Shown here: positions 1-64,000 of the stretch, piece by piece
How positions within the stretch are numbered: the first letter of the stretch is position 1
Layout of the letters: every line of letters starts with the position of its first letter
NCBI GenBank assembly: GCA_000320545.1
Contig: ADNK01002140.1
Location: 124,001-188,000, forward strand
From: Bigelowiella natans CCMP2755
Lineage: Eukaryota; Protista; Cercozoa
DNA length: 64,000 nt
Direction: 5' to 3'
The notes under the pieces: generated by a model
The model's input: only the letters and a program-made list of their open reading frames with translations
The model's database searches: none
What the model was told of the DNA's origin: nothing
Made by a program: the position numbers and the translations under genes

Positions 1-728
1 TCACTTCCATCTATCATCATTTCCAGTTCACTAAAGCCTCTTCTAAAATCGTCTTCGTCAATGTCTTCGAAGGGTCTCATACTCCGTATTGCTTCTGTCC
101 AGTCATCGAAGGAAGTGTGGACGATTATGCTGGAGCTTTTCATTTTCACATCGAAGCCGACCTTTTGCAGACGTTCTGTGAAGAACGTCACTGGCGGATG
201 TGATCTCTTCCAATAATCAGCTAGAAGAGGGAAGAATGGATAATGGCTGCAATCATGAGGTCGAGTGTAAATGACAAGTCTCCCGTCGGCTTTCATCTGT
301 TGGAATAAACCGTAGAAGAAATCTGCCATTGATTTAAGTTCAACGTCAAGTGCAGGGTCGATAAGAAGCGCCCTATCAATCCAAGGATCGTGCGCTCGTT
401 GAGAAAAGCTGAAAAAGTCTGTGGTGACCACAGTTTCCGTCGACTTCGAGTTTTCGGCATCATTATGAGACTTAGGGCTTAAGATGTTCGTTTTCTTTAT
501 GTCAAAGCTATCGAAAAGGGATGCCATCTCGGGGTCTGATGTGAAATCAACGACGACGTTCGAATCCGTTGGAAGAATACTCTGGCGAAGAGTATTGACT
601 TTGAAGCTTCTGAACTCCTCGTCTTGGTAAACAGACGACGAAAACTGCCGTTCCAAACACCACTTTGGACGGCGTCGTAGGAAAGCCCGGCGCATTTTCG
701 TTGCAGCAGTGATTCTAGGGATTGCCAT
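1..728 (-). CDS. Class I SAM-dependent methyltransferase-like protein with an Arg-rich, possibly mitochondrial, N-terminal leader; 3' end runs off the window
   Basis: Hand translation from ATG 728 is open to the window edge: MAIPRITAATKMRRAFLRRRPKW...VVVDF...DFFSF...WIDRALLI...FFYGLFQQMKADGRLVIYTRPH...YPFF. This resembles the later MTase motifs. It is absent from the ORF track because there is no stop in the window. Confidence 0.55.
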   Translation of the reverse strand, partial: MAIPRITAATKMRRAFLRRRPKWCLERQFSSSVYQDEEFRSFKVNTLRQSILPTDSNVVVDFTSDPEMASLFDSFDIKKTNILSPKSHNDAENSKSTETVVTTDFFSFSQRAHDPWIDRALLIDPALDVELKSMADFFYGLFQQMKADGRLVIYTRPHDCSHYPFFPLLADYWKRSHPPVTFFTERLQKVGFDVKMKSSSIIVHTSFDDWTEAIRSMRPFEDIDEDDFRRGFSELEMMIDGS

Positions 729-1829
729 TGTACTTGATATCACTATAGACTTGAATCGATGGTTGGTAAATATTCGTAGTGGATGCGGTGACCAGGAGAG
801 AGAGAGTGACGTAGGGGGTTGTGGTAGTTCATGCACCACCACTTGCGACAAGGGTTCTCAAGGGTTTTTGGCTAATACAGCCTTTTGATTCCCTGCGACA
901 TCCCATATTGATTGTCGTCTTGTCACCACCGCGAAAAGGCTTGAAAATGCGTGCAGCTGCTGGCACCTCTTGATGCTGCACTGCTCTGAGCGGTCCGAGT
1001 TGTTCTACAAATCGACCACATCGCAACAGTGATCGTCGTTTCTTTGATGTGCACATTCCATGGCTAGATGTGGAGGAACACACCGTCTTGAATTCTTCAG
1101 AACCTCACAGCCACGCGATCACTAGGTCAGTCCGCGCAGAGCAGCCGGTCACGCGCAGTGAGTGCGATGTGTTCGTTGCCTTGTGGACTGACACTCCAGG
1201 ATGTTTTCTCCAGTTCTGGGACCTTCAACAACTGCACGGGCTTGCTTCGACGTCCATGGATGAGAAGTGAGACACACACATGCAATGAAGAGTTTTGTCT
1301 CGTCTAGTCGTCGCCACGTGATCACGTGTCTTGCTACTTTTTGTTTGCACGTGCACCACTCTGCATTGCAGGCAGGCGCAGCGAACGCCAGGATGCGCCA
1401 TCCATGCGCGTGGACCAGCTGTAACATTGACTGGTTCCTACACCTTGCACACACACACACACACACACACATGCACGTTGATCAGCGCGTGCGTGTCTAG
1501 ATGTGAGCATGAGCGCGATTCCATGGCCATTAGCAAGCTGGTCCACAGACATGCTAGCGCATAATGACTAGATATCGCAGAATGGAGCATGGCATGACTC
1601 GGTCATAGTATAATAGAGCGCGCACTCTCTAGCGATAGTCTCTGATTTAGCGCTTGTGATGGATAAAATTGAGGTTTCATTAAATGCGCAAGATCGTAAA
1701 CTGAAATGGCTTTCCACTAGCAGTTGAAATGCAATCTCTTGTTCATCCAATTTCTCAACGCGCTTTCAAGCTGGTGAAACACCGCAGTGTCATGATCATG
1801 ACAGCATATGTGATCATTGTCACCATCCT

Positions 1830-3076
1830 TCAATCGCCATCATTCCCCTCTTCACCTTGGATATATGGAGATATCTGCACGGCGGTAGAAGGTTTGAATT
1901 CGCTTATACCGGATGGGTCACGCACCTGCTTTTGCAACAATAAGGAACACAAAAAAGGTTGTCGTACTGTTATCTAATAAGGCTTAATTAAACTGTCAAC
2001 TCTATATCTCTCATATTTATGTCAATATAGTAGCTGGTCAAACCTCCCACGTGAATGGAAATGGGACATCAAGTAGAAGATTCATTTTGTACACGGTTTC
2101 CATAATTTTATATCTGGTATCGTTGCTCAAAAATTGGCCTTGACCACCCCGAACATGGTTCCCCTAGTTTGATAAGGAAAATTTGCGAAAATTATTGCCA
2201 ACACAGCTGTTTGTGTCCGAGTGTTCAGGTAAAAGGGACGTTATCATGTTTTCCTTTCTGCAAAAATGATGCTTACATATACTTATTCTCGTACAGAGAT
2301 ATGAATATACCAAGTTATGAATAACATTTCCAATGTGGTTGTAGATAGTGTCGATGTGCTGACGGCGACCATCCGGACGAATCTCGAAGTCTTCTAATTC
2401 AGGAATCCTTTTGTATTATGCAATAAGAAATATTTTCTCATAAATGACGTCGAATACACAGAATCAGGAAAATACATCATCACCACTAATCCCCAATCTA
2501 TTTATCCTTCCGCCTTCATTATCACCACCTTACAACAGCGTACTTTGACTTTAGGAAAACCGTCCAAAGATCCTTTGTGCTATTTATTTTAAAGACCATC
2601 TTCCTCGGTTGCCACAACTCTTTGCCCTTTTCTGGTCGTACTCTGAAAAGCAATTCATCCTACGTAGTCGATAAATTAACAAAAAAAATGATGATGGCTA
2701 ACACTAATAATAATCTTAAATTTCTTATTTTCATTTCTGGCTGGGAAATGTTTGATTTGACACGGTATCTCTACTTCAAAGCTATGAACGTATCGTGAAA
2801 ATCTCACTGTCTCCTTTCGAACTGTCTCCCTATTGTCTACTAATATGAATAATAGTTTTCCTCCTCGTCCTCCCTGAGCCCAAAATAGCACAACGTCAAT
2901 ACCGTTTTCTTTGGATTGGTCTTTGTTTGAATGTGCGGGAAGCCTTGCATAAAGGTGCTGAACTCCATATTGATGGCTGAATTTAGTTCATCTGTGAAGA
3001 AGAAACAAGAATGTACATGAAATGAGGACAACTTTTACCATTAAATTCACACACACACACACACACACAGACACAG

Positions 3077-3121
<45 letters not shown>

Positions 3122-3739: not shown

Positions 3740-4600
3740 ATGGATTTTGAAGACAATGAAAAAGAAGTTCTAGATGGTACGAACGACGATTTCGGCGAAG
3801 TAGATTCAGAACCCTGCGAAAACATACCAGAATCATCGCGAAAAGTTAAAGAGACACCTTTCATAATTTTCCATCATCATCATACCTTCGATCTAGATGC
3901 TGAGCGACACAAATGCTCGGCAGGCGATTGAAGTAAGGAGAACCCAGCGTTTGATGTGATTATTTGGTGAAGTTGATATTTGGACTTTGAAGACTCATCT
4001 TTTGGATAATTTATCGAAGTATGATGACGTAGAAGCCCACAGATGGAAAGCAGCAATATTGAGGACACTCTAAAGTCGTAAATCAGGTGAGCGTGACGAG
4101 GCATGGGATGGATTGACTTTAAATGGACTTCGGAAGATCTTAGATCTGCAGCCACACGGCCTCTAGACCTACGGTTTACAATGAAATCGCTGGAAAGTAA
4201 TTTAGCGCGTACGTCGCCGTAAATAGTGTCTGCTCTCCCACCAGATGCCTCTCCCGACCGTTGTGTTGCTATGATGTATGCGAATCGAATTATCCCAGAT
4301 CCGCAACAGGCACTCTTGAACGCCGCTGCTGCTTCATCATTGTTGCATGACAATGTTTCTAAATATTTGGTTGTTTTAGGTTGTCGCAGGGTCAAAATGC
4401 TATGGGATCATTCTTCATTTATTTGCACAGGAGGCATGAGCGTAGGACTCAAAACTCACTTTCGTTCAGTCCTCACTGAAACCAGTTCGAGGCACTGCAT
4501 TTTGCACGCTGCAAGTGTCTTGCAACACTTTGGAAATGTAGTTTTTCATCATTGTTTCATTGTTTTCAGTCTTGCAACACTGTGGAAATGCAGTTCATGA
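3740..4600 (+). CDS. Hypothetical multi-exon protein whose last exon runs into the TpA-depleted block (possibly damaged)
   Basis: In-frame model with canonical introns: MDFEDNEKEV...SSRK|MLSDTNARQAIE|MESSNIEDTLKS|SAATRPLDLRFTMKSLE|NASPDRCVAMMYANRIIPDPQQALL...YLVVL|GGMSVGLKTHF... No family recognised. Confidence 0.4.
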
Positions 4601-6045
4601 CACATTGTTCAGCTCCAACACTCGTTCATTCAATGGAATCACTTCGTGTTTCATGTCAAATTGCGGATGACGCAACGTGATGTGTGTGGCATGTGCAATG
4701 TCACTGCCTAGCTGCGTCCATCATTCAAATTGAAATCAATTGTGTTTCAATGTTCACACTCACGCAAAGCTCATCATTCACTTGTTCGTTCGTTCAGCAC
4801 ACTCCAACGATCCCCTCCAGGAAGGGCACATCCGTGCTGCATCGTGCCGCCCACACGTCACGTGTTGCACCACTGTGTCCAGAGCGCGTCGGTGATCGAT
4901 GTGTGCACTCATCTGGCACTGACAACAAGACTGCAAGACTGGAAGAACAAATCGTCACGAGGCGCGACCGTCGATCGATCGATGAGTTCGTGGCTTGTGG
5001 AGACAAACCAATGACCTGCGCAAGCGAGTTGCGCTTCGCCAGTCGTGAAGGACAGAGCCGCAGTGTGGCTGAACAAAAGTGGCTCACGTGCCACACCGCA
5101 CACAAGGGGTTGTGTGCCAGGCCAGCCAGCGGGAGCTGACGCAGTGCAATGCGCGCAACTGGACAAGCACGTGCAATCACCGTGCACACGCACGCCAGCA
5201 CGGCCTCGATCTTCCAACAACACCGGATCATCCGGCGACGACCAATTTTCGGACGCTCCCGGGACGTCTAGACGTCGTCGTGTCGCTTCGCAGCGAAAGT
5301 GCGAGCGAGGCATCGTGCAGGAAGCTGGCATTGCGATCGTGACCATCGTTCTGACAAAAGTGAGCGTCATCATCACCGGAAACTGCGATGCACATGGCGG
5401 TGTGGATGACAGGCAGTGCTAGCTGGGGTGCGTGTGATGAGGGCAATTTCACTGGTCCAGTGTGCAGCGGTTTGCAAAGTGAGTCTGGAAGTGAGGCTCG
5501 CATGTTGTTTTGCACGATGAACAATGAGCGCAACAGCTCTGAGCTAGACGTGCTGGAGTGGCACAGTCTGACAGTGAGACTGGAGACTGACGGCCAGACC
5601 AAATCGCGCAAGACTTGGTGGGACAGCGAAATCGACCAAGTTTTCATGTTGGGCCTAGCGCGTCAATGTTCGCCCATGCCAGCATGCGGCGGAGAGACCG
5701 TGTGCCATGAGCTTCATGCACATCATGCAGGGCTAGAGGGGACATTGCGTGTTGCTGGATTGCAGCATGCACATTCCAGCATTGCGGACAATGCGACCAA
5801 TGCATGCGTGCAATGGATGCAAGGTGTCTGCCATGCATCACAAATGCAGTGGCAACTAGCGGACACCACGCCATCACGCGTTGAACACGCACCCAAGTTT
5901 TTCCCAGACTTGAATTGGAATTGCACTCTGTTCCACACACTTTGGAGGCCTCTTTCGATTCACTGCCATTCATGAAAATGTGCTCATGATGGATCTGACA
6001 AATCCAAACACAGCTTTGACAATGCGAATGTTCTTCGCTTCTTTG
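4541..6045. other. TpA-depleted hypermutated block, core 1
   Basis: Only 7 TA dinucleotides in about 1505 nt, all within CTAG (4708, 5268, 5419, 5544, 5655, 5733, 5856). CA/TG-rich; CpG, ApT and ApA remain common. Confidence 0.9.
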
Positions 6046-6486
6046 CTACACGCTACAGCTTGTCCACTACTCTCAGTGTTGTTGTCCTTCCTGTTCTGTT
6101 CTTCTCATCGTTCCCCGCTGTTTCAACAGAGAGTGTCGCAATGAAGAGCAGTGATCACGTGTCTACATGCCACAAAGCTTTCCACCGTCGTCCTCATCAT
6201 GACCGTTAGAGTCGTTTTTAGGATTGGAGACACGTCAACTGATGTTGAAATGGATGAGGGCTCTGTGCTGCATCATGATCTAAATGTGAATCAACAAAAA
6301 TGAATGTCAGGGAGGGCAATGTGAGAATGGAGGACAATGTGTCTTCAACATGATGACAATGGACAACACATGTACCATGTACATGTTTTCACATACCACA
6401 CATGTGCCATCATCAGTAGCAGAGAATTCTGCATTGTGCACGAAGTGTGCACTGTGTAGTTTTGCTGTTGATCTCCACACATTCAC

Positions 6487-7101
6487 TCACTGCCCCGTCC
6501 TAATTCTAGACAATCTTTGGAAGGCAAATTTTGTGCTTAATGCTAAATGCGATGACACAGTATGCGTTGATCCTATCGCAACTACCGGCTTAGTTGTAGC
6601 CCATTTGAAGAGGTCCCTCGCAAAGTGCTGGCAATTGCTCGAAAGGTAGTCGCAATGATCAGAATGGCCCATGACGAACTTCTTGATGTCCATCATGGTC
6701 ATTTTCCTCCATGGAGTGCGGCGGGTGTGCTTTGCATCGATGAGATGCGTGTGAATATGGTGATACGCACAGTACTCACCGATCCTTCGACATTCTTTCT
6801 CATCCTGGCAGGCGATGAGTTCGACACCTCGGCGTGATTTTTGAGCAAGGAACCAGAGAAATGCCGGGTGGCCCTTGTCATCATCCCACGCCGCTGCTTT
6901 GATCTGCAACCACCAGTGCGCCATAGAAATCCCTATTGCTGGGTGTGAGATTGCACTTCCTATCTCTCCTGGCACCCCTCCAATGTAGGCAGACAGGACG
7001 CTTAGGTGCACCACCAGAGTTCGTGTTGCCTGCGTGTCGCTCAAAGTAGACACGTCATAGCCTACGTGCCCCTTGTCCGACGAAGAAGAGGAAGTACCCA
7101 T
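6487..7101 (-). CDS. Single-exon PPPDE/LRAT-like (permuted papain-like) protein, apparently eroded by TpA mutation
   Basis: ORF contains AHWWLQI (candidate catalytic His) and HCDYLSSNCQHFARDL, matching the Y-x-x-L-x-x-NC-x-HF motif with Cys at the expected Tyr position. Confidence 0.55.
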   Translation of the reverse strand: MGTSSSSSDKGHVGYDVSTLSDTQATRTLVVHLSVLSAYIGGVPGEIGSAISHPAIGISMAHWWLQIKAAAWDDDKGHPAFLWFLAQKSRRGVELIACQDEKECRRIGEYCAYHHIHTHLIDAKHTRRTPWRKMTMMDIKKFVMGHSDHCDYLSSNCQHFARDLFKWATTKPVVAIGSTHTVSSHLALSTKFAFQRLSRIRTGQ

Positions 7102-9646: not shown

Positions 9647-9678
<32 letters not shown>

Positions 9679-10199: not shown

Positions 10200-11279
10200 T
10201 ATCTCGAAGTCACCATTGGGTAGATTTCCCCAGAGTCGCGTTTGCGTGAGCTTGCATTATTTCGCAATTTGCCATTGCTAGCAGTACAGGGTTGTCGTAC
10301 TTCTACAAGATCGTTTATGCACAAATAATGTCATTCTTACTAGAGTCAAATCGCAAACCTTTGGTGTGTACAGAGAGCCCCGAGGGTCGATGCATAAGAT
10401 GAGTTTACTATGGTCATGCCAAATACGTGCATCCACAAATGGATGTCATATCGAACGTTTGCATTGTTTCTCCGCCTGTACGTTCAGCGCTACCGATTTG
10501 GGCTTTGGTCACGTCCCACAGCATAATCCATCGTCAGTGTTGTACGTGTGGTGGATTTGCCTTGTTATTGCACGCAATGCACCCATCTGCATGGCAAGCT
10601 GCTAGATCGTACGCGAATATAGCCTTCGTGGCTCTATCACCCCGCATGCACAGTCAGTACATCTAGACATGCTAGCTAGCATGTGCAACCGCTAGACGAC
10701 TATCTAGCCGTGTACGTGTACTAGTGTGTGCGAGTGGCTCATGCCATTTGCATCGATTTGATCTAGCGACGGGCATAGTCTAAAGGGCTCTGCCGCGTGC
10801 CCCTCTTAAAACATGCTAGCATGTGTGCTTTAGGACATATGTGACATGTGACATAGTTCACGTGTGCTTAACCACGAGCCATTATTAGCCTGCCCTTTTC
10901 CATGCACTAATCTAGTAATTGCCATGATGCCGTGCAAGCTATACTTGTGATGTTAGCGCTATCTAGCTATGCTAGTATGCTGCGATACATTTCACACATA
11001 CTGCATAGCATGCGAACAAAGTGCCGAACACGACACAGTTGTGGACACAGCTCGTGGATACAGCTCGATCATGCTAGCATGTATAGCATCGTATTAGGCA
11101 AATGTCAAGCAAAAATACCGTCTACATCTGTAGCTAGCTGCGATCGCGATACTCACAACGCAAATCAATGCTAAAACACATAGAATAGTCATTTTATGTT
11201 TTTGTCGATTGTTGTGAGTAATAGCTAGATGTGTGCCTGCGACTCAAATAAACAGGAATGAAGTACATAAATAAATTCT

Positions 11280-15690: not shown

Positions 15691-16490
15691 TCAAATGAAG
15701 ACAATTGCGATTCTCAATAAATCATTATACACGGCTCCCTCTATACGATTAGTACAAGTAAATCACGCTCCTCGAAAGAAATGTATGGTTCGTGTCGAAT
15801 TGGAACGGCATGGAAATCTGTGCATGCTAGCGTATACGTGCATCTCAATGGACACAGTTTACACGATGTAATCTTTATAATGTGTAGATGTGTACATCTC
15901 ATGTAAACGTACGTTGTACACACATCTCACATGTAAACGTGTTCGTATCAAATGATTCAAGTTATATTCATAGCATGGTTGTGCGCGACTTTTTAGTTCG
16001 ATTGTACATGTAGTATGCATGCACAGTGAAATAACGCAATCTATATGTGTAATATGTGATGGTCAAACATTAAAACCCGGTACTGTGTGCTAGCATGGGC
16101 CAAAATTATTAAGCGCCTTTCGAACGCATTACAAGCGCTACATCGCGCATTTTATGCATGCCCGCCAAGGCCAAAAGCGATGCTCGCTCTACTAGTCTAG
16201 TGGACAATGCTGCACAGTGACACCACCTAGCTATACTCGAGCAAGCACACGATAATCATCACGGTGACGTATAGAGATTTAGCTGTATGTATCTTGAGAC
16301 TTATAAATAAATGTGACCACGCCTTTCTAGATGTCTACACGGCCATAGCTTATGCTAGATAGCATGCACACGCATGACACCATACAAGTTTAATTGCACA
16401 CCTAGCGCTCCTAGCTGTAGCACTGTAAAACTTAATCAATATTCATTAAATTTACGCACTAATAACTTAAATAATAATTATAGAAAATAT

Positions 16491-21932: not shown

Positions 21933-21995
<63 letters not shown>

Positions 21996-39400: not shown

Positions 39401-41238
39401 TCACCGTGTGGAACTCAAATATTTTCCGAGTGCCTTCAATCCGAAAACAATACTTGCTTGTCTCCTTGCCTCGAAGACAAGTAAGGTAACATGACACTTC
39501 TCATCGTCCGTGAAATCGTACCCAAATACTTCATAGTCACTTCGTGTGATATCTTGAGGGTAGCAAGCACATTTCTTGATGAATTTCTTTACCTGCTTAT
39601 TGAGGTATTTATTTATTGAAGCGTAATCGTAGTCATCGTTCTCTATCCCATATAGACGGTGCACGTAGTACCATACTGCCCTTCGAAAAGGCCCCGTGTC
39701 TACATTTCCAGCACTGGTTAGCCGTTGATACGTTAAATTGTAGATCAGATCGAACTCGCTGTTAAGCATTGGTGCAAATCCTTGGTAGTATCTCGACATC
39801 AACCCGTATCCGTGAGAGCGCCAATCGTAATCCTGTCTTCGATGTAATTTTTCTGTCTTTATATTGAAATCAACGTAACGCTCAACATCCTTTCCAGTGA
39901 ATTCTGGATACTTGCTCGACGTGTCAGTGAGGTTGGTCAGGCAGCAAATATCAACTGAACTGGCTTTCTGTGCCGCCAGCTTCTTCTTCTCAACTATCTG
40001 TGGACGTTTTTCCTTAGTATCTAACAGCTTCAAGAGATTTTCTCTGTTCTTTTGTACCGTCTCCCTTGTTTGGTCGTCAAGCTTGTAGTCTTTCGATATT
40101 AATGTGGAGCGGGTTGGATTCTCCATATCTATCTCTGGAAGAAGACCCATCCCGTGCACCAAGCCGGTGAGTGAGAAAAATGTGGCAAAAATTGCAATAA
40201 TTTGGACAAGCTCGGCTACTGTCCAGCCATTTGATCCTTCCATCTGGCCGCCTATGTCCTCGGGAGTAAGTTTCCAAGGCCGGTGAGCCAACAGTTTTCC
40301 TAGTTTTAAGAGTCGTTGTATCTTTTGGGGTGCTTTATCAAGGCCCTCTAACCAAGAAGGTTCTCCTCTGTTGAAAGTAAATTCGCTCTCTTGAAGGGAG
40401 ACTAAGTACTGACAGTTGTGCAAACTACTCGCAATGATAGCAAGATAGTTCCGGATTGGTACCGATAATTCCCCCTCTTCCCTCATTAAAAACTCTGTTG
40501 TCATTGTGAAAGCTTCCAAATACAAAGGATGCCATCCTAAAACTTGATCAATATGACTTAACCTTCCCCGCGAGGCGAAAATGTCCTCGAACATTTGCCT
40601 TACCACTTCATCCTTCGGTGAAACGGGAACAAGAAGGTTTGATGGGACGAAACTAGATGCTTGGCTAGACGCCGGATTATCATTCTCATGTCTACGATAA
40701 AGACATACAGTAAGCGCGATTCATCTTAAACGAACTATAAGATGACCTTTTCAAGTAGTCCTGCATTAGCTCTCTTACTTCACTGAAAGGACACTGTAAA
40801 AGAATCACACATTGGATATTTGTTCAGTTACGTTGTCGTGTTTGTTGGGATCGTATGGATTACCTTGAATGCAAGACGTCGAACCGTTGGCAATAAAATA
40901 TCCGAATAATCCCCAGTTTTCAAAGGAAACAATATTTTGGCTGACTCCTCCTCCTCTTCCCTCGGAACCAAGTTCTCAAGGACAGAATAAACGCACGAGT
41001 GTAGTGCCTTCGCCCTGTCGATGATGATGACTAAATAAGAGCAATGTCTAAATTCCTATCCATATTGTTACCTTTTTTGTTCGCAAGAAATTGTCTGTTG
41101 GATACACTCCAGTATGGAACCAAAGTGCAAGTGGAAGAGTACATCACGCTTCTGATCCAGGCTCCTTAAGCTTTTCAGCTGGTCTTCTTTGGCGGGCATG
41201 CGCTTAAATCCACAGGTTTGGGGTCTCTTTGAGGTCAT
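39401..41238 (-). CDS. SESN: Sestrin (PA26 family)
   Basis: GWHPLYLEAF...EGELSVPIRNYLAIIASSLHNCQYLV, KLLAHRPWKLT, WTVAELVQIIAIFATF, DYDWRSHGY, FRRAVWYYVHRLYGIENDDYDY, EKCHVTLLVFEARRQA. Short 5' exons extend to ATG 41238. Confidence 0.9.
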
Positions 41239-41719
41239 CTTAACAAACTGCAACACCGGGGCGGTTTCTCAAGAGATTGATTATTGCTATGTTGTGGTGT
41301 AATGCTTCAGCTCTTGGAAAAGCCAAAGGGGTACCGCCCAGCAGGGGCGTTGCTCACAATATTTAAGATCGATTATTGATCTAAAATATCAAATAAACAC
41401 CTAGTAAATAGAGTAAATTACCCTATTTAATTGTCAATTTGTCTTACTTACGCATGTAATGCATATTTCCGGAATATGTAGGTTGTTTATTTAGCACTGA
41501 ATCATTATCTGACTTAATAATGATTGTTCCGATGACATTTGATGAACAAACAAGATTGTTCAAACAGAATGTATTGGAATATTAACCAAGAACTGTTGTC
41601 GCATAATTTAAATGGCATTAAACATGAAGTATTTTGTTAAAGCCGAATGTTGCGGAGCTTATTTTCTGGAAATTTCTCGTGGGAAAACAAGAAATTATTT
41701 GAGACACTCGAAATGATAG

Positions 41720-41720: not shown

Positions 41721-41782
<62 letters not shown>

Positions 41783-41783: not shown

Positions 41784-42012
41784 TTAGTTCCTAGATCTAA
41801 TAACACAAAGCAACTGGTATCATACTAACTACCCTACCATGTGTGTGTGTGTCAATGATAGCTAGTAGGGGGATCCAAGAGACAGTAGGTGTCTAACTCA
41901 TCAAATGATGCCTATCTTGCCTAATACAATGTAGTTTATAACAGGAAGAAGCGGTAGGAAAGTCATCACGGAAAGAAGAGGGGTGGCACCCCTCTTACGC
42001 AGGTCGGAAACT

Positions 42013-43107: not shown

Positions 43108-43905
43108 TTATTATCACAATGTAAAGCTTCGAAATGTCGTCTCTTTGTGACACAGACATGTACACGCATGTGTCTGTTAGATGTGCACACGCGAAACATG
43201 TCAGATGCTCGCGGTGCAAAAGCAGTGCCTCACTACAAAACTAGAAAAGTAGGATGCATGCACGGACGCACACCGCATAGTCAGCATGCATGCACAGTCA
43301 CAGATGTACATGCACATCTAGACATGCCTAGATGGACATGTGTGTGCTAGCTCTAGCTAGCTATATAGCGTGGTCATGCATGTCATAGTCATGTCTAGAT
43401 GTGCGTTCTAGCGTAAAACAATGGTAATTACAATGGCCGGAATATAGGAAAGAGAAATGTAGTAATGGATCGATCACACGATGCTGCCATTTACAAGTCA
43501 CACGTAATAGACAGCCTACCTAGCCACGTGTGTGTACACGTACGTGCCTACGCATGCGTGCGGCACCTACAACTATAGACTTTGTCTATTGTTACACGAC
43601 GTACACCACTAGAAAATGCTAGTGCGCATGCAACACATCATACTGTCCTACGTCATGCCATACCATTATTGCACAACCGTTTACATGCAGGTGCACGTAC
43701 ATTCATCGTGACACATCTTTTTAACTAGATAACAACTAGGCGTCTAGTGCTCGTGCGCCCCTGGCACTGTGTGTTGTTCCCGATCATTTCCTAGTCGTTA
43801 CACAAACAACACCTGACTCGACATGCCTAGAAATATACGCCCACCGCTTGGAATTTATGCCAACGAATTTTGAAAATAGAGTTCACAGTCAAAATCATTT
43901 TTGCT

Positions 43906-47969: not shown

Positions 47970-49034
47970 ACTAGCTGAAATTGGGAATAGCTATATCATG
48001 TCTAGAAAATTATGAAAAGTAGGTCTGAAAATACGAATTCGGTTCAGTCCACACTGTCTAGCTAGCTGCGGCTTGTTTTGTACGATGCTAGCGATGCTGT
48101 GCAAGCTGTGCATGCTAGCATGCCTTATTCTACATATTATATTTGTGGCAAATCCGAAGAACCATTCATTCTAGCTATCTAGCTATGCTAGCTACCTAGA
48201 TATGTTGCACGACACAATATCGCGATCGGTCCGTACGTAATTCCGTATGTACCCTACACTAGATACCTGTCACGCGCTACACATCGTAGTGCGCATGCAC
48301 TGCATAATAATCGCGCCGCTCTAGCGCTATATAGCTGGAGCTAGCTAGCTAGCTCTAGAGCTGAACGGATGTGTATATGTGCATGTGCTTCGCGGCATAG
48401 CGTACGCGTATCAACGCACTAGCATTAGCTAGTTAGAGCCAGCCGCGTAATGCCCAACTCTAAAACTATGTTTCTTGAAAAAATATTTATTAATAAAGTA
48501 CAATGTACATCAATCTTCGTGTGCAACCAACCTCGTACGTTACATGCAGATAAATTACCTTGACGAATGACGGTAATTTGTATTTTGACGCTACATTGCG
48601 AGAAGCAGACTTTAAAATATTCCAGGACAGAAGAAAACTAGTTATTTACTAATCTGCTAATTTTTCTTTTCTTTTTTCTGGAACTTGACTAAATGAGAAT
48701 ATCTGACGAGATTCCTGTACTCTCTGAGGTACCCTTTTGCTCACATACCATCTGTGCATAACTTACACGATGTTTATCAAAGAAAGACGCATTGGTGCAT
48801 AGAATATATGAAAGACGTTGATTTTAACTTTGTTTAGGTACACTTGTACGAACACGAATAAATTCTCTTAACCATCCCAGTTAACCAATGTGATGTGAAT
48901 TGAAGTAATTTCTTAAAAGGAATGAAACATCTTATTTGTAGAGATCACCTCTAATATTGCCAAAATATTGAGGGATTGACCAAGAAATGCTATACTTCAT
49001 GTGTGAAAACTTTCTGAGGGTTGTCAATCATCAA

Positions 49035-50576: not shown

Positions 50577-52014
50577 GATGAATCCTCAAAATATTCAAGA
50601 GATCCTTATTGGTTCTTCGTGAACAGTTGTGGTGTGAAAAACTATGGTGAGTTATTCCACACTGCTTGTCACAAAACTCAGTTATTACTTATGACAATGC
50701 TCTTAGGGGAGATTCACACCCCTTTATGTTCGTGTGGAGAGCTCGAGACCCTTGCTATTTGCCTCGTTCAGAAACAGTTATTACGGACCGGTGCGCGGAT
50801 TCTCCGGTTTGTTGGTTGGTTGTGTTTTACACGGCGGCCTCCGGAATAGGAATCGCTTGCTTTTTGTACTACCAACCAGCACAGTCGTAAAGTAGTAAGA
50901 CTCACTTTGTCCTTCGAACGCTGCTCAGCTTTCGGTAAACTAGTTCTTAAGATTGGGGCAATGAAGCCTACCGTTGGCGCAATACTACCCTACTTGCTTG
51001 GAAATATACCTCATTAGGCTAAAATTCCCCTCCATTTGTTAGAGAAATAATGTCCTTGTTTAGGTATATATTGGAGCTACAATACACAAAAGTATGTGGA
51101 ATATTTGAAGAAATATTATCATTTTGGTGATAATCAAAACAAAATAGCATGATTTAGACACCAATTGAAATTTTAGAGAGCACATCTTTTATCTTGTAAA
51201 ATATTCTTAAATCTCTCTCATACTTAATTATTGCAGACTGAAAGAGCAACATCGACAAAATGAAGGATACTTTAAAGTGGAAAAACTAAGGCATATCCCA
51301 GAATCATTGATTTCGCCATATTAAAACATGCAGCCAGTGCATCGGATAACATGACTTCACAGATCAAAAGAACACAAGAAACTAATATCTACTTCCTCTC
51401 TCTTATGTAATATTCCCCAAAGTTTTATAATACGAATTTTGTATTGCATAGGCATATTTTATTGTTCTCATCTTTGTTGTATATTCTCTTTATTGTTAGC
51501 AAACTTGGAGAACCCCTCTTTCCGATTCAGACTTTACTACCCAATAACAAATTTAGATTATATTCAAAAATGGACTACAAACAAAATAGGCGACATCAAC
51601 AAAATGAATATGCTGTTAGTAGTTGCACTTCATTCATGTCGCGGGTTGCAGCAAAAAAGAATTAGGCCCGTTTGATTGTATTTTTTAAGTTTCATTGCTA
51701 AAAAATGGAATTAGTCATAAGAATGGCATTCTTTTTGTATTTATATCAATAATACCGGCGCTATCGGTGTCTTTATGTACTTCTTAAAACTTCCTCGCTC
51801 TTTGAATATCCGATAGTTTCAATATTCTCGGTGGTTCCGCAAATTAAAAAGTCCCTTTTTCAGAATGGCCGATGCTTTCAATAATTTTCGCCGAGGGAAG
51901 ATTTCAGGATGGATTAGCCTACTTTTTCATCAAAATTGTTAACATGCGAAATGTTATTTCTTTGCTCTTTGGTGAAAGTCGGCTCGGCTTTTAGGCGAGA
52001 TAGGATTTGAGTAC

Positions 52015-53596
52015 AAGGGGCAGATTGATTTGACATGCGGCCGCTGTGCAACAACTTGACCCACGTTCAAACTCGTGTTTTTCCTTTGATCTTCTCGTCT
52101 CTCTGCCCCCTGTTCCGTTTCTCAAGTCCCATTGGAATCACTTCGTCACTTTGTGCTTCTTTTCTTCTTTTTTTTTCTCAACTCGTTCATCGTTCACGGT
52201 GCTTGTTCCTGCATCACCCTCGACATTGGCTAGTTGTGTCACTCACCACCATCAGGGTGCTGACAATTCCTCGCAATGCCAGAATGGTTGTTGTTGAGGC
52301 TCTGCTGCACGCAAACGCCTGTCTCCCATGTGGTTCAGGCGCATGCAGATTTGATCAACGCTTTGTTCATTGTTCATTGTTCATTGTTCATTGTTCATCG
52401 TTCTTCTTCTTCTTCTTCTTCTTCTTCTTCTTCGCTCTCCTTTGCGTTCGTCCCGCACCGATGATCCTCCACACATTGCACCTGCGCAGTGATCCTCTCA
52501 CCGTTGAAACCACTTCGTTCAATCATTCACTCATTCGTCTTCGTGTGGTGGAGATTTCACGCCGTCAACTTTTCGGGGTGGCAATGACAACTCACAACCC
52601 AGAACTGGAGGTAGTGGGTCGTGACACTTTCTCAAGTCCAGAAGTCACGCGCCTGGGCATCACCTGCATGGACCCCCACCCCCCACTCAATTGCAACTAG
52701 GTGATCAGTGTGCCTCGCTGTGACGACATGCACGGAACCCTGGAACTGCCAACGCTTCACCACGCACGTTGCACCCCACGCGACACACAAAGCCACGTGC
52801 GTGCAAACACCTTTGTGTGCACTTTGTTTCTCCCAGCCTTGATTGTTCTCTGTGCACGCATGCCAATGTCATGCCCACTTCGTGCCACTTCAATGCACGT
52901 GTGCTCTTTCGTGACTCCACGTGCACGCACTCGTGTCTGATGTGCCAATTTGTGCCACACGTGCGATGCGTGAACCCCACCTCTGGCCTCTGGCCCTGGC
53001 TAGCTGGTGACAGCGAAGTGATTGACGTTGCTGCACACGCCTAGACGCACACAGAGAGAGACACGCACGCACAAAGGCATTTGTGTGCACTTTCCAAAGC
53101 TTTGTCTCTCTGGACAGCTGGACAGACTGATCAATCGGATTTGAGAAACCCAAACCCAGTTGCCATGATCGAACTCCGGCACGACTAGCAGCATCGTTGA
53201 CTAGTTGAATCGAACCTGTGCCCTCCTAGCCTCCAGCGCATCCAGCGCATTCAGCATGAACCCTGAACGAACGTGACGTAGTTTCTCTGTGCATGCCACC
53301 CCAAGTTCACCATGGCACACACTGGCAGACGCATCGCAGCATTGGAGCACACAGCACACAACATGCACGATGTCTGCAACGCTTTGTGGTCACGGAGTGC
53401 CAGAGTGAGCTAGTGAGGGGACAAAGCCAAAATGCCATCATGCCAGCATGGCTAGATGGTTCGTGGCGTCATCACATCATCAGTCGATCTGTCTGTGAGT
53501 GAACGTGACGTTGAGACAGTCAGTGCTCTGCTGTCCACCCCAGCACCCGCTGTCGCTCGCATCGCCGCATGCTGGCATGCCCTGCGCTAGCCTGGC
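52015..53596. other. TpA-depleted hypermutated block, core 2
   Basis: 12 TA dinucleotides in about 1580 nt: 10 in CTAG and 2 in GTAG. Confidence 0.9.
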
Positions 53597-53777
53597 GTAA
53601 ACATGGCGGAGGAACGTGAGGATGTATGTTGTGATGTTTTCGCATCAGATCCAACATCAAATGGATGATGACGTGCCATGGTGCACATGCATTAGGCGAA
53701 GCTGCCCACGCAATGTGGTGTGTTTGCACAATCTTTATATTCAATCGACAGTGATAATAGACACAGCAATACACTAA

Positions 53778-53812
<35 letters not shown>
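53778..53812. repeat. (TA)n tract near the right edge of core 2
   Basis: Near-perfect TA repeat. Confidence 0.85.
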
Positions 53813-53978: not shown

Positions 53979-55188
53979 TTATGCAGAGCAGGTGTCGGCA
54001 TCACACAATTCTCTACAATATCTTGATTTTTTAGGCCAACCATCGACTGTCTCGTTCTCGCACCATTTAAGGATTGATAGACGTAACTTGTCCTCAGACT
54101 CTTTAGAAAATGGTACTGAAGGATATCTAGCATCTCCCACCGATATGGAGGGAATCAAATTTACAGCATTTTTAAACCCATCCATACCTGGCTCAACGTT
54201 TGACTTCCATACATCCATAAAACTAGTGCACAATGCCTGTAATTTACGAGCTTTGGATAGGTCACCTTTTAAGTATGTGTCACGGAAATAATTGTAAAGG
54301 TCTCCAAGTACGTTGAACTGCGAACCGACGTTGCCTGTAATGCCCATCGATAATGTTCCAAGCATTATCTCCTCTCGACCAGAAAGAACCTCAAACTTAC
54401 CAGACTCATAATTATGAAGTTCTGTTGCATCTGCTAATCCCTGGTTGATGTAAAGTCCTGTGTATTTAACCCCTGCGTAGTTCACCACCCCAATCGACTC
54501 AAATGCTCTTGTGAGCCCCATCATGCCATCACTGAAAGCAACATTGGTCATGTGAGGAATATGATAGTAGTAGAATGGGAGTCCAGGTACTTCGTTTGCA
54601 ACCAATGCCATCGTATTTGCGAGTGCAATCGTTGATATTGGGCGGAAGAAGGAGGGAGCCATTGCAGCGATAGCGGATGCTCCGTGGGCTTTTGCATGTC
54701 TTGCTAGCTTCTTTGCCGTGCCAATATTCTCGCATCCTACGTGCACTATGGAACGAATACCATAGCCAAACCTTTTTTCGACAGCTTCCCATTCCTCGAC
54801 GAGAGCCTCCCTCTCCTTCTGGTTCATCTTGACGGACTCTCCCGTCGTTCCCGTGAGGAAAATCCATTTCACACCAGTAGAATTCAGCCATTCAGCTTGT
54901 GCCTGGACTTTTGTCAGATCCAATTCCCCCCGTTTGCTGAATGGGCTATGTATTGCGGCGATTACACCGTCAATTTTCAATGGCTTTATCTGCAAATCAA
55001 TGTAGACTTCACCGATCATCTCAATCGACATCAGTTCTGTTAGCACGCACCACCTTTTCTGGTCGGGAGGCATCTGCTGCGTTCGAAGTGGGCACGAGCG
55101 ATGCAATAAGTCCTAAACACAACATCATGGTTGCACTTCGAAGTAAAGGAGTCCTCCCCCTTCCAAACTGCACCAGCAAATCCTGCAT
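53979..55188 (-). CDS. NPL: N-acetylneuraminate lyase / DHDPS-family aldolase with an N-terminal hydrophobic leader
   Basis: IFLTGTTGES, IVHVG, AMAPSFFRP, LPFYYYHIP (Tyr relay), GVKYTG (Schiff-base Lys) and VGSQFN. Intron 54990-55053 gives RPEK|IKPLKIDGVIAA. Start at 55188 or 55128. Confidence 0.85.
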
Positions 55189-56429: not shown

Positions 56430-56468
<39 letters not shown>

Positions 56469-61913: not shown

Positions 61914-62786
61914 TAGCTGTGACACACATTACATGCATGTGGCTTCTTGACGTTTATGAGCGCCCTGCTCAAAATTTGTAAATACAAATGAGTTAGAGTA
62001 AGGTTGCATGAACATGCCAGATGCAGCCAATGATGCGATGACACGTACGACGAAACGAACAACATCTAGAACTAACTAGAGAATGAGATCGGCTACATTG
62101 GTTGTAGCGATGAATGTTCTTGGCTCTCGCTAAACAATGGTAGAGGATGTTGAAACAGACACTAGAATTAAGTCATGTTTGTAGCACACGCGCGTCTCAT
62201 TCGGTGCACTTCCAACAGTGATGCCATCATGTCATCATTAGCGTGCACGTGCATGATCGAATCGCTACGCTAGCACGCATCTGGTGGCACACACACAGAC
62301 ACACAAGCAATCGCTACAGCATGCAACGTTACGTTGTGGCCATCTTGCTGTGATCATGCATGAAAGTGCGCGGCATGCACATGTGTGGTGCATGTTGTCA
62401 TGCCTCGGCACGTGTGAAAAAGGTGTGGCAGATGGGCTACGCATGGTCTAGATGTGGTGGCGGACGTGTCCGTTGTTAGCGGCGCACTAAGCAATAACAA
62501 CGCGGCACGCTGTTGCCGTGGGACTGCTGCGGCTAGAGCAACAAACAAATGTACGTCGTCTCCAGATGTGCACGCACACGCCTAGTTGTTGAAGCTCGTC
62601 GCTACGCTGTCCTTCATTTCGCACATGTGTTGTTGTGTTGTTGCGTTTGTCTTGAGGCACTGACATGTGTTGCATAGGCTCAAATTAACATGTGGCAATG
62701 GAAACAAACAGACACAACATAAGTGCTGTAGCCGCTGCATTGCACAGCTACAGCAGGATTACCATTGAAAAGATTTAATGAATCCA

Positions 62787-62931
62787 TTACATCCATCTCA
62801 TACGCTCAAATTCTCCTTTGCTTGACTCATCGGATATTAGTGCTATTAGACCTGGCTCTTCGATTTGTTTGGTTAAGACCTTTGACCTTTTTAAGTGTGA
62901 TAATGCAAATCTTTGAATGAAAGGAATATGA

Positions 62932-62968
<37 letters not shown>

Positions 62969-64000
62969 AACTTTGTACACAGTGAAATCACCAATAATGG
63001 AAGGGAAGAGTACCTTGAGAGAGTGTACGTTCTCTTTAATGCACAATGCTGCTAAAATGTCTTCGTGATCTTGTGACTCTGGTTTCTGAATGAATTTAGG
63101 ATAAGATGAACAAATCAATGGGTGCGATCATTCCAAATTACTTGTAAAGTTCATTTCCATCGCTTTGTTATTACTTTCTTAGTGGATTTATCCTCATTGC
63201 GTGATGGGAGGATACAGCAGGAACTGGCCATCCTCGATCACTTGGTTCATTCATCACCATCATCATTGCCGTCTTTTCGCGCTGTAATCTTGCCATGTCT
63301 AGGGAGTGGCGAGTTTTAATCGAAGTCATAACCTCAAGAGCTGCTGACCCAGGAGACTTGAGCGACGACGGTGGAGGAGGAGGAGAGTTTCTGATATCCT
63401 TATTATCGAAGTTGTGGTCAATTCTGGTCCTTGTCGTCCGCTGTTGAGTACGGGGAAACTTACCAGCTGCTAAAAAAGTAGTGGTAGTCTTTGGTAGAGG
63501 AGGTGACGATACTCTTCGTTTGATGTGCATGAGTCGTAAAGACATGATGCTACCCCTCCTCTCGTCGGCATTTCCCTTCTTTTGATCGTTGTCATTGCCA
63601 GCCGATTGTCCACTCCTCCATCCTCCTCCTCCTGTTAATTCTTTATCGGTGATGTCGGCTCTACCCCCCTCTTCTTCTTCCTCCTCCTCCTTCTCCTCCT
63701 CATCATCATAGAAATTGTATATCCTAAATAGTGATAAAGATGGAGATTACAGATATGCAGAGGATGATAATAATATAATGAGGTAATGAATAATGATGAA
63801 GAGCAATCAATCATCCCCATCCCCACAATTGTCGCCACTACCACATACATCTCTTAGTAGAAGTAGCAGTAGTAGCAGTGGTAGTTTGAACAATCGCTCG
63901 TCAGTCGATGCATATCAATTTCATATATTAGAGCACGTGACAAAGTGAAAAGGGTGACGACGATTGTATGTATGTCAGCAAACAACGTTAAATACTGACA
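62787..64000 (-). CDS. 3' part of a hypothetical multi-exon protein; 5' end outside the window
   Basis: Minus-strand exons (ORF 63171-63545; ...HEDILAALCIKENVHSLKVLFPSIIGDFTVYK|; terminal ...EFERMRWM-stop) with microsatellite introns. Confidence 0.4.

What the first reader, a model, noticed from the sequence alone, without database searches (positions are those of the whole stretch)
1..64000. A TpA-erasing mutational signature is confined to non-promoter intergenic DNA
Most spacers that begin downstream of a stop codon show TpA loss and/or CTAG excess: about 0.9-1.6, 4.5-6.4, 10.4-11.2, 25.2-25.9, 38.4-39.2, 43.1-43.8, 48.0-48.45, 52.0-53.7 and 61.9-62.7 kb, with weaker signal at 15.8-16.4 and 58.2-58.6 kb. 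Divergent promoters and introns stay TA-rich (for example 11 TA in the 60 nt at 19741-19800). Introns are also largely neutral DNA, so relaxed selection does not explain the contrast. Inference: the process targets untranscribed or silenced chromatin, or transcription-coupled repair protects gene bodies. That would be a genome-scale system I cannot match to a described one.
Basis: partly seen in the sequence, partly recalled or inferred. Interest (0 to 1): 0.8.

Follow-up and report, generated by a model that had tools for sequence, protein, structure and literature searches.

The report
TpA-erased islands in Bigelowiella spacers
Three kilobase-sized stretches between genes of the alga Bigelowiella natans have had almost every TA step turned into CA or TG; this is the footprint of a TpA-specific hypermutation described in a 2026 preprint, whereas the CTAG-rich spacers listed with them are a separate, unexplained feature.

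Summary
The window is Bigelowiella natans nuclear DNA: MMETSP transcripts match it at 100%. The finding merges two things.

(A) Three islands (908-1530, 4445-6163, 52014-53597) have almost no TpA. One run of 1508 bp has no TA outside CTAG. CpA+TpG rises to about 1.7 and GC to 0.53. Two or three other 3' spacers are partly erased.

(B) CTAG-rich, palindrome-rich zones lie in 3' spacers. CTAG is 4.5-10 times the composition expectation there, and about half of these zones show no TpA loss.

(A) matches the TpA->CpA/TpG hypermutation shown by mutation accumulation in this species (bioRxiv 10.64898/2026.01.13.699255), so a described system exists.

What this window adds:
- The islands are too short for that paper's cluster rule.
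- They show no viral or transposon signature.
- They carry CTAG-zone motifs, both intact and in converted form (ATGCCAGCAT/ATGCTGGCAT), so native spacer DNA was hit.
- Surviving TAs follow a hierarchy, CTAG >> CTAC/GTAG > the rest. This fits my tally of the preprint's Table S2, where an A followed by G is hit least often.

The proposal that repair protects gene bodies is not supported. The CTAG excess remains unexplained.

The parts
908..1530 (.). Island B1: TA-erased spacer core between the 5' side of a minus-strand gene (ATG near 728) and a small CTAG cluster
   Evidence: TA o/e 0.24, CA 1.82, TG 1.61, GC 0.53. Surviving TA contexts are CTAG 4, CTAC 3, GTAA 1.
4445..6163 (.). Island B2: the largest TA-erased island, with a core at 4541-6046 that has no non-CTAG TA
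   Evidence: TA o/e 0.11, CA 1.78, TG 1.60, GC 0.52. The 1508-bp run has P about 1e-39. Survivors are CTAG 7, CTAC 3, GTAG 1. Two consecutive 1-kb windows pass the preprint's thresholds.
52014..53597 (.). Island B3: TA-erased island with sharp borders, lying between the DHDPS 3' end and an AT-rich kilobase upstream of an HMG-box gene
   Evidence: TA o/e 0.14, CA 1.73, TG 1.61, GC 0.53. Survivors are CTAG 10, GTAG 2. Non-CTAG TA counts in 100-bp bins run 5,5,2|0...0,1,2|17,11 across the borders.
62180..62700 (.). Partly erased core of a convergent 3'-3' spacer
   Evidence: For 61900-62700, TA without a 5' C or 3' G has o/e 0.36 and CA+TG is 1.71. The remaining TAs are mostly CTAN/NTAG.
25247..25896 (.). 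CTAG zone with partial TpA erasure
   Evidence: 16 CTAG, non-CTAG TA o/e 0.46, CA+TG 1.77, CC+GG 0.42.
38376..39138 (.). CTAG zone between convergent genes. It begins at the stop codon of the plus-strand gene and ends about 70-100 nt beyond the sestrin poly(A) site
   Evidence: 21 CTAG (27.5 per kb). Sestrin transcripts L005-L007 end at 39203-39236.
10602..11228 (.). CTAG zone downstream of the stop codon at 10032, with no TpA loss
   Evidence: 15 CTAG, non-CTAG TA o/e 0.92, two exact copies of ATGCTAGCAT.
43241..43830 (.). CTAG zone in a probably convergent spacer, with no clear TpA loss
   Evidence: 16 CTAG (27 per kb), non-CTAG TA o/e 0.84.
47971..48432 (.). The densest CTAG zone, in a convergent spacer, with no TpA loss
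   Evidence: 18 CTAG (39 per kb), non-CTAG TA o/e 1.04, (AGCT)n runs at 48339-48354.
16090..16414 (.). Smaller CTAG zone whose flanking genes are uncertain
   Evidence: 8 CTAG, non-CTAG TA o/e 0.97.
1497..1720 (.). Small CTAG cluster abutting island B1 on its upstream-gene side
   Evidence: 5 CTAG in 224 bp.
5676..5685 (.). ATGCCAGCAT: the TA->CA derivative of the zone palindrome ATGCTAGCAT, inside B2
   Evidence: All three central-TA variants lie in islands and none of the other 15 hits does.
53440..53449 (.). ATGCCAGCAT: a converted palindrome copy inside B3
53569..53578 (.). ATGCTGGCAT: a TA->TG converted palindrome copy inside B3
53785..53812 (.). Intact (TA)14 microsatellite about 190 bp outside the right border of B3, between the island and the DHDPS stop codon
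   Evidence: It shows how sharply the erasure ends.
53979..55031 (-). DHDPS-family gene whose 3' end faces B3
   Evidence: Pfam PF00701, E 4e-37. The 350-aa product is present exactly in EukProt as P0027. CDS TA o/e is 0.71 and CA+TG 1.21, both normal.
6487..7101 (-). Single-exon gene of 204 aa whose 3' end faces B2
   Evidence: The product is present exactly in EukProt as P0029. CDS TA o/e is 0.60 and CA+TG 1.31. The 323 bp between its stop codon and B2 are partly erased (TA o/e 0.35, CA+TG 1.97).
39203..41364 (-). Sestrin gene with four exons, used to identify the organism and to place one poly(A) site
   Evidence: Transcripts L005-L007 are 100% identical. Introns are 53-68 nt.

Best explanation
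The three TA-free islands, and the partly depleted cores at 25.2-25.9 and 62.2-62.7 kb, are footprints of the localized TpA->CpA/TpG hypermutation of Bigelowiella natans. In the islands it has run almost to completion.

The likely chemistry is that proposed in the preprint: deamination of the adenine of a TpA step in DNA. It acts on either strand independently, so each TA becomes TG or CA.

An adenine followed by G is a poor substrate. CTAG has that protection on both strands and CTAC/GTAG on one strand, so these contexts outlast all others.

At least the halves of the islands nearest the upstream gene's 3' end are native spacer DNA of the CTAG-rich kind, not recognisable foreign DNA.

The CTAG-rich, palindrome-rich zones of 3' spacers are a separate native feature. 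They resist the process relatively well but were not created by it.

Shown here: the composition, the mass balance, the context hierarchy, the converted motif copies, the position relative to genes and the identity of the organism. Taken from the preprint: the direction and rate of the mutation. Inferred: the enzyme, and what selects a region for hypermutation.
For: - Organism: three MMETSP transcripts are 100% identical to the window.
- Signature: islands have TA o/e 0.11-0.24, CA 1.73-1.82, TG 1.60-1.61 and CpG about 0.9. One 1508-bp run has no non-CTAG TA, P about 1e-39.
- Mass balance: reverting 72-86 CA/TG per large island returns TA o/e to 0.81, CA/TG o/e to 1.29 (baseline 1.22) and GC to 0.47-0.485.
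- Known process: in the preprint's mutation-accumulation lines, 230 of 231 mutations in two viral regions are A->G or T->C, nearly all on TpA. [quoted passage not shown]
- Context: island TA o/e is 0.01 with neither a 5' C nor a 3' G, 0.11 with one of them and 1.39 for CTAG. Of 31 survivors, 21 are CTAG (binomial p 1e-17).
- Graded series from unerased zones to partly erased zones to islands, per kb: CTAG 28.4, 18.2, 5.3; CTAC/GTAG 8.5, 12.4, 2.3; every other context falls to 0-0.3.
- My tally of the preprint's Table S2, by the base 3' of the mutated A: A 71, C 56, G 23, T 76. The relative rate for G is 0.47 (p 5.5e-6).
- Both strands are hit: CA and TG are intermixed, with no strand patches.
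- Native DNA is hit: the zone palindrome ATGCTAGCAT appears in islands only as ATGCCAGCAT or ATGCTGGCAT (3 of 3 such variants in islands, 0 of 15 other hits). TGC(CA|TG)GCA occurs 4 times against a null of 0.5. Intact GCTAGC and AGCTAG are above the Markov null. CC/GG depletion is shared by islands (0.64) and zones (0.54), against 0.92-0.98 elsewhere.
Against: - No polarised substitution data exist for these particular loci. The direction is inferred from composition, from converted motif copies and from a different part of the genome studied in the preprint.
- The preprint links hypermutation to viral or transposon DNA, and nothing of that kind was detected here. Complete erasure would itself degrade such signals.
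- The three-base preferences from the mutation-accumulation lines do not explain why CTAT/ATAG and CTAA/TTAG vanish while CTAC/GTAG persists. Wider sequence context or the ancestral sequence must also matter.
- The availability of contexts in the viral regions is unknown. I used this window's frequencies as a proxy.
- The left halves of B2 and B3 carry few zone motifs, so their origin is open.
Confidence: 0.8

Rival explanations
1. The islands are degraded insertions of foreign DNA (a transposon, virophage or giant-virus fragment) that the host recognised and hypermutated, as the preprint proposes for its clusters. On this view the borders are the insertion borders.
For: - The preprint finds the signature enriched in reverse-transcriptase and DDE-endonuclease genes and in unannotated genes.
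- The borders of B3 are sharp.
- Spacers that hold islands are 2.1-3.4 kb, against about 1.0-1.3 kb for the convergent spacers here.
- The left parts of B2 and B3 share a 13-mer and lack zone motifs.
Against: - No Pfam domain, homologous protein or viral-contig relative was found for any island reading frame. The one weak match is to a short repeat motif.
- There are no terminal inverted or direct repeats at the borders, even when transitions are tolerated.
- There is no paralogue elsewhere in the window.
- Intact and converted copies of native zone motifs lie inside the islands.
Confidence: 0.25
2. One reading: the process acts on untranscribed or silenced intergenic DNA in general, and transcription or transcription-coupled repair protects genes, introns and promoters.
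For: - In this window every footprint lies in a spacer core. Coding sequence, the likely 3' UTR next to B3, verified introns and four divergent promoters are spared.
- Erasure is graded among 3' cores.
- The preprint's giant-virus region is transcriptionally silent.
- Two TpA-type mutations in the preprint fell on scaffolds with no virus-like reading frames.
Against: - Within the hypermutable viral regions, exons, introns and intergenic DNA mutate at similar rates (Table S1).
- About half of the 3' cores here show no TpA loss.
- Sparing of genes and promoters could simply reflect purifying selection.
- No expression or chromatin data were available for these loci.
Confidence: 0.3
3. TA is removed by selection rather than by mutation bias, for example to avoid TA-targeting transposon insertion, a TA-cutting nuclease, or a structural property of TA steps.
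For: Avoidance is nearly total and depends on context, which a recognition-site model could also produce.
Against: - The islands show no sign of function: no coding signal, no RNA family, no tRNA.
- Neighbouring spacers of the same kind keep normal TA.
- The species has a directly observed TpA-specific mutator with the right spectrum.
- Converted copies of a palindrome that is otherwise kept intact argue for decay, not for selection.
Confidence: 0.05
4. The pattern is an assembly or base-calling artefact.
For: None was found.
Against: - Flanking genes match independent transcript assemblies and EukProt proteins exactly.
- The preprint re-sequenced the strain with Illumina, found 90% of the genome callable, and saw the same compositional class genome-wide.
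- The pattern is specific to context and to region.
Confidence: 0.02

Closest known systems
Localized TpA->CpA/TpG hypermutation of integrated viral DNA in Bigelowiella natans (Mettrop et al., bioRxiv 10.64898/2026.01.13.699255, April 2026)
   Same: Same species. Same compositional signature: TpA depleted, CpA+TpG enriched, GC raised. Both strands are affected, and the signature is bounded by region rather than spread across the genome. The island 1-kb windows pass that paper's own thresholds (rho TpA <= 0.43, rho CpA+TpG >= 1.52).
   Different: - The islands are 0.6-1.7 kb and never give three consecutive passing windows, so they fall below the paper's cluster definition.
- They sit between ordinary host genes and show no viral or transposon signal.
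- They contain native spacer motifs.
- Erasure is essentially complete, whereas the paper's giant-virus region still has rho TpA 0.45.
- The flanking-context hierarchy (CTAG spared) is not discussed in the text or in the supplements held.
[quoted passage not shown]
   Same: A dinucleotide-specific, region-limited transition hypermutation that leaves a strong compositional scar. It is thought to disable invading or repeated DNA.
   Different: - The direction is opposite. RIP turns CpA into TpA (C->T), raising TpA and lowering GC. Here TpA is lost and GC rises.
- RIP needs duplicated sequence. The islands are not repeats of each other or of anything else in the window.
Deaminase hypermutation in animals (ADAR A-to-I editing of double-stranded RNA; APOBEC3 C-to-U editing of viral DNA)
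   Same: ADAR prefers a U before the edited A and produces A->G changes. Both systems cause clustered, context-dependent hypermutation of invading nucleic acid.
   Different: - Here the change is in genomic DNA and on both strands in equal, intermixed amounts. It is therefore not a retro-copied, one-strand-edited RNA.
- G after the A is disfavoured here. From general knowledge, ADAR2 favours a 3' G, and the tRNA substrates of ADAT2/3 often have G at position 35.
CpG depletion through cytosine methylation and deamination
   Same: Loss of one self-complementary dinucleotide, with a matching gain of TpG/CpA.
   Different: CpG is not depleted in the islands (o/e 0.80-0.93). The lost dinucleotide is TpA, and GC rises rather than falls.

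Membership tests
B. natans TpA hypermutated regions (bioRxiv 10.64898/2026.01.13.699255) | The sequence is Bigelowiella natans nuclear DNA | tested here: met
   Transcripts L005-L007 (JGI copies of MMETSP assemblies) align at 100% over four exons. The closest named relative of the sestrin is Amorphochlora, at 62%. Window GC is 42.6%, against 44.9% for the nuclear genome.
B. natans TpA hypermutated regions (bioRxiv 10.64898/2026.01.13.699255) | TpA depletion: rho TpA <= 0.43 in 1-kb windows | tested here: met
   B2 and B3 windows pass at nearly every tiling phase. Island TA o/e is 0.11-0.24.
B. natans TpA hypermutated regions (bioRxiv 10.64898/2026.01.13.699255) | Coupled CpA+TpG enrichment: rho >= 1.52 | tested here: met
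   CA+TG o/e is 1.66-1.71. The mass balance closes.
B. natans TpA hypermutated regions (bioRxiv 10.64898/2026.01.13.699255) | A cluster of at least three consecutive passing 1-kb windows (the paper's 124 clusters) | tested here: not met
   At most two consecutive windows pass for B2, one for B3 and none for B1, at any phase.
B. natans TpA hypermutated regions (bioRxiv 10.64898/2026.01.13.699255) | Foreign (viral, transposon or bacterial) origin of the affected sequence | tested here: inconclusive
   No Pfam, protein-database or viral-contig relatives were found, and no terminal repeats. Native zone motifs are present. Complete erasure could hide an old foreign origin for the left halves.
B. 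natans TpA hypermutated regions (bioRxiv 10.64898/2026.01.13.699255) | A directly observed, elevated A->G/T->C rate on TpA at the locus | not testable with these tools
   This needs the mutation-accumulation reads or strain polymorphism mapped to these coordinates. The islands also have almost no substrate left.
B. natans TpA hypermutated regions (bioRxiv 10.64898/2026.01.13.699255) | Transcriptional silence (reported for the giant-virus region only) | not testable with these tools
   No RNA-seq coverage was available. The metagenome collection lacks B. natans transcripts, so the negative scan is uninformative.
Fungal RIP | C->T at CpA, giving TpA excess and lower GC in duplicated DNA | tested here: not met
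   TpA is lost, GC is raised and the sequences are not duplicated.
Retro-copied ADAR-hyperedited RNA | A->G changes on one strand only | tested here: not met
   CA and TG counts are similar and interleaved (runs-test z -0.07 to +2.6).
Methylation-driven CpG decay | CpG depletion | tested here: not met
   CpG o/e in the islands is 0.80-0.93.

The most novel reading that the evidence does not exclude
The TpA editor of B. natans is not restricted to foreign DNA. It also works, in bursts, on native untranscribed spacer cores throughout the genome. This would leave thousands of islands of a few hundred bases to 2 kb that the published 3-kb cluster rule misses. On this reading the CTAG-rich palindromic cores of 3' spacers are functional elements, for example termination or boundary sites, built from the one TA-containing motif the editor handles poorly. 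The abundant (CA)n repeats of this genome would partly descend from edited (TA)n repeats.
Probability: 0.3. Interest if true: 0.65.

Novelty: new member of a known kind. Interest (0 to 1): 0.42.

Why it matters
A programmed, dinucleotide-specific A:T->G:C mutator in a eukaryote is rare. It was reported only in 2026, as a defence against integrated viruses.

This window shows the end state of that process at single-TA resolution, in ordinary gene-dense DNA. Three things follow:

1. It gives a sequence-context rule: an A followed by G is protected, so CTAG survives. Any candidate deaminase must reproduce this rule. The rule appears to run against the known preferences of ADAR2 and the natural substrates of ADAT2/3.
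2. The target set includes native spacer DNA. That bears on whether the system recognises foreignness or chromatin and transcription state.
3. The published cluster count probably understates how much of the genome has been hit.

The main claim of the finding, an undescribed genome-scale system, does not hold.

Tried and rejected
- Repeat-family origin. blastn among islands and zones, the repeat finder, and a transition-tolerant Smith-Waterman search of each island against the whole window found only microsatellites and short CTAG palindromes.
- Transposon ends. No inverted or direct terminal repeats were found at the island borders.
- Coding or foreign origin. Pfam on ten island and flanking reading frames, two word-index protein searches, one exhaustive HMMER search and two viral-contig scans gave nothing usable. 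The one hit, P0030 (E 5.5e-5), matches a 39-residue repeat motif and is not evidence.
- Transcription of the islands. The positive control (DHDPS) showed that the collection does not hold B. natans transcripts, so the negative result for B2 is uninformative.
- Exact-protein look-ups for more transcripts. Most failed. Two genes were confirmed only as EukProt proteins.
- My own exon-chaining gene finder over-chained and was abandoned. The simpler codon-score map is noisy. Gene orientation around 11-30 kb and around 1.7-4.4 kb is therefore uncertain, and Pfam on the reading frames there was blank.
- Strand-coordinated patches of conversion. None were found.
- Structure. The CTAG zones fold no better than shuffles as single strands (z -1.4 and 0.04). 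There are no Rfam families or tRNAs in the window.
- CTAG excess as a by-product of sparing. Rejected by reasoning: protection can keep CTAG at its neutral level but cannot raise it 4.5-10 times, and several zones have lost no other TA.
- The contig carrying the 60%-identical sestrin (L001) is a compact, intron-poor genome of another organism. It was not useful for comparing spacers.

Full report
**Identity of the window.** The window has 42.6% GC, short GT-AG introns and many microsatellites. A sestrin reading frame at 39401-40606 (minus strand) has a 100% identical JGI protein. Its closest named relative is the chlorarachniophyte Amorphochlora, at 62%. Three transcript contigs carrying that protein align to the window at 100% identity over four exons, 41364 to 39203. 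Two further genes give products that are present letter for letter in EukProt. The window is therefore nuclear DNA of Bigelowiella natans.

**Two phenomena, not one.** A 500-bp profile and a census of gaps between TA steps separate two things that the finding merges.

(A) Three islands are almost free of TpA: B1 908-1530, B2 4445-6163 and B3 52014-53597.
- B2 contains a 1508-bp run with no TA outside the context CTAG. At the window's own density of such TAs (0.06 per base) the probability is about 1e-39.
- The islands have TA o/e 0.11-0.24, CA 1.73-1.82, TG 1.60-1.61, CpG 0.80-0.93 and GC 0.52-0.53.

(B) Eight CTAG clusters hold 104 of the window's 240 CTAG sites, at 15-39 per kb.
- In the main zones CTAG is 4.5-10 times the composition expectation.
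- In about half of them the other TAs are at normal frequency.

- Three are fully erased: 0.9-1.6, 4.5-6.4 and 52.0-53.7 kb.
- Two are clearly partly erased: 25.2-25.9 and 61.9-62.7 kb. TA with neither a 5' C nor a 3' G has o/e 0.36-0.40, and CA+TG is 1.71-1.77.
- One is weakly erased: 38.4-39.2 kb.
- Five show no TpA loss.

**Direction and mass balance.** I reverted CA/TG steps to TA in silico until TA o/e reached the level of ordinary non-coding DNA (0.81). This takes 72-86 reversions in B2 and B3. At that point CA/TG o/e has fallen to 1.29 (baseline 1.22) and GC to 0.47-0.485. One process, TA->CA or TA->TG, therefore accounts for the missing TAs, the extra CA/TG and the raised GC together. 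CA and TG are equally common and interleaved along the islands (runs-test z between -0.07 and +2.6). Both strands were hit, site by site. This excludes a retro-copied RNA edited on one strand.

**The process is already described.** A literature search found bioRxiv 10.64898/2026.01.13.699255 (Mettrop et al., April 2026). Its main results are:
- In mutation-accumulation lines of B. natans, 231 of 302 nuclear single-nucleotide mutations fell in an integrated giant-virus region and a virophage region.
- The rate there is about 1000 times background.
[quoted passage not shown] - They propose an ADAT2-like adenine deaminase acting as a defence against foreign DNA.

By the paper's own thresholds, B2 gives two consecutive passing windows, B3 one and B1 none, at any tiling phase. 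These islands carry the signature but fall below the published cluster rule.

**Context rule.** The held text and supplements of the preprint contain no analysis of flanking bases.
- In the islands, TA o/e is 0.01 when there is neither a 5' C nor a 3' G, 0.11 when one is present and 1.39 for CTAG.
- Of 31 surviving TAs, 21 are CTAG, 9 are CTAC/GTAG and one is GTAA (binomial p 1e-17 for the CTAG share).
- Unerased zones, partly erased zones and islands form a graded series per kb. CTAG goes 28.4, 18.2, 5.3. CTAC/GTAG goes 8.5, 12.4, 2.3. All eight other contexts fall to 0-0.3.
- I tallied the three-base contexts in the preprint's Table S2 by the base 3' of the mutated adenine on its own strand. 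The counts are A 71, C 56, G 23 and T 76.
- Against the availability of contexts in this window, the relative rate for G is 0.47, compared with 1.04-1.29 for the others (p 5.5e-6).

A two-strand model in which an A followed by G is a poor substrate explains why CTAG, protected on both strands, lasts longest. With those rates, CTAG survival at the islands' degree of erasure should be near 0.17. The observed value is 5.3/28.4 = 0.19, if the ancestor resembled an unerased zone.

Two caveats apply. The availability of contexts in the viral regions is unknown. The three-base rates also do not explain why CTAT/ATAG and CTAA/TTAG disappear while CTAC/GTAG persists.

**What was hit.** No island reading frame has a Pfam domain, a relative among 5.8 billion proteins, or a relative in viral contigs. 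An exhaustive HMMER search gave only a weak match to a short repeat motif. The borders have no terminal repeats, and the islands have no paralogue in the window.

The islands do carry the hallmark motifs of the CTAG zones:
- The palindrome ATGCTAGCAT occurs exactly five times in the window, always in zones.
- Its one-mismatch variants inside the islands are ATGCCAGCAT (5676 and 53440) and ATGCTGGCAT (53569). These are exactly the TA->CA and TA->TG products. None of the other 15 hits lies in an island (3 of 3 against 0 of 15, p about 0.001).
- TGC(CA|TG)GCA occurs four times in the islands, against a Markov null of 0.5.
- Intact GCTAGC and AGCTAG are also above the null.
- Islands and zones share a depletion of CC/GG (0.64 and 0.54, against 0.92-0.98 elsewhere) and a bias towards alternating purine-pyrimidine steps.

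At least the parts of the islands nearest the upstream gene's 3' end are therefore native spacer DNA. CTAG is resistant, not immune. The left halves of B2 and B3 could still be old insertions. They share a 13-mer, which could be chance (p about 0.08).

**Position relative to genes.**
- B3 lies between the DHDPS stop codon (53979) and an AT-rich kilobase upstream of an HMG-box gene. Its borders are sharp: non-CTAG TAs per 100 bp run 5,5,2|0...0,1,2|17,11. An intact (TA)14 repeat sits about 190 bp outside the right border.
- B1 starts 180 bp upstream of a start codon, and that 180 bp has normal TA.
- The right edge of B2 grades into the 323 bp downstream of a confirmed gene (TA o/e 0.35, CA+TG 1.97). 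The coding sequences on either side are normal.
- The one mapped poly(A) site, for sestrin at 39203-39236, lies 70-100 nt before the first CTAG of its zone. The same zone starts at the stop codon of the convergent gene.
- Every well-supported convergent spacer has a CTAG zone or a partly erased core. Four divergent promoter spacers have 0-3 CTAG and normal TA.

The proposed cause does not follow from it. In the preprint's hypermutable regions, exons, introns and intergenic DNA mutate alike (Table S1). Sparing of host genes and promoters can also be explained by purifying selection. Gene models around 1.7-4.4 kb and 11-30 kb are uncertain, because my gene finder failed and Pfam was blank there.

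**The CTAG zones remain unexplained.**
- They are rich in (AGCT)n runs and in short palindromes. There are 56 eight-base palindromes against 23.7 +/- 4.6 in Markov shuffles, and 22 ten-base palindromes against 6.6 +/- 2.5.
- They do not fold better than shuffles as single strands.
- Resistance to the editor can preserve CTAG but cannot enrich it several-fold, and several zones have lost nothing else.
- Possible causes are slippage of the self-complementary AGCT repeat, a bound palindromic site, or a role in 3'-end formation or termination. None of these was tested.
- I found no literature on the zones.

**Verdict.** The TpA-erasing process is real and striking, but it is already described for this species. 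The islands here are new, small members of that known class. Three modest additions come from this window: a flanking-context rule, evidence that native spacer DNA is hit, and the likelihood that small islands are undercounted. I rate interest at 0.42.

Noticed in passing
window 10602-11228, 16090-16414, 25247-25896, 38376-39138, 43241-43830, 47971-48432, 1497-1720: CTAG-rich zones in 3' spacers. They are palindrome-rich and biased towards alternating purine-pyrimidine steps, with (AGCT)n runs and five exact copies of ATGCTAGCAT. CTAG is 4.5-10 times the composition expectation. They are absent from four divergent promoter spacers. The cause and function are unknown, and I found no literature on them.
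   Followed up: partly
window 21935-21994, 27652-27714, 31919-31992, 56370-56464: Four of the seven (TA)n microsatellites abut a (CA)n or (TG)n run. All four have the same polarity, 5'-(CA)n(TA)m-3' on one strand. This could be one-strand TpA conversion of (TA)n. B. natans is reported to be rich in (AC)n repeats (PMC13746701).
   Followed up: no
window 4635-4647, 52134-52146, 52504-52518: The 13-mer GGAATCACTTCGT is shared by the left parts of islands B2 and B3, with a third copy at two mismatches in B3. All hits with two or fewer mismatches lie in islands. The flanks align only weakly, and the match could be chance (p about 0.08).
   Followed up: partly
window 4517-4543 vs 4569-4595; 6363-6378 vs 6395-6410: Two short local duplications at the edges of B2 differ at a TA step: GTAG against GCAG, and TGTAC against TGTGC. 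These are small in-window examples of the TA/CA/TG polymorphism.
   Followed up: no
window 37184-37520: A cluster of five CTAG sites (14.8 per kb) lies inside the long reading frame 36547-38379, not in a spacer.
   Followed up: no
window 8407-10032, 30149-31204, 36547-38379, 41700-41790, 60997-61097: Many reading frames carry long homopolymeric amino-acid runs (Q, S, T, D, E, G) encoded by trinucleotide repeats. These runs make codon-usage gene finding unreliable here.
   Followed up: no
preprint Table S2 (scaffold_10 positions 402688, 416158, 450385, 431449): Four of the 211 listed hypermutations are T->C in the contexts ATG or ATT, which are not TpA. The text says that all GC-biased mutations fall on TpA. 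Separately, TAG (3) and CTA (17) are unequal, although they are the same context on opposite strands.
   Followed up: no
L001 (ENA metagenome scaffold, 89 kb): The contig carrying a 60%-identical sestrin is a compact genome with closely packed genes called as single uninterrupted ORFs, from a different small eukaryote. It is not a chlorarachniophyte-like locus.
   Followed up: no
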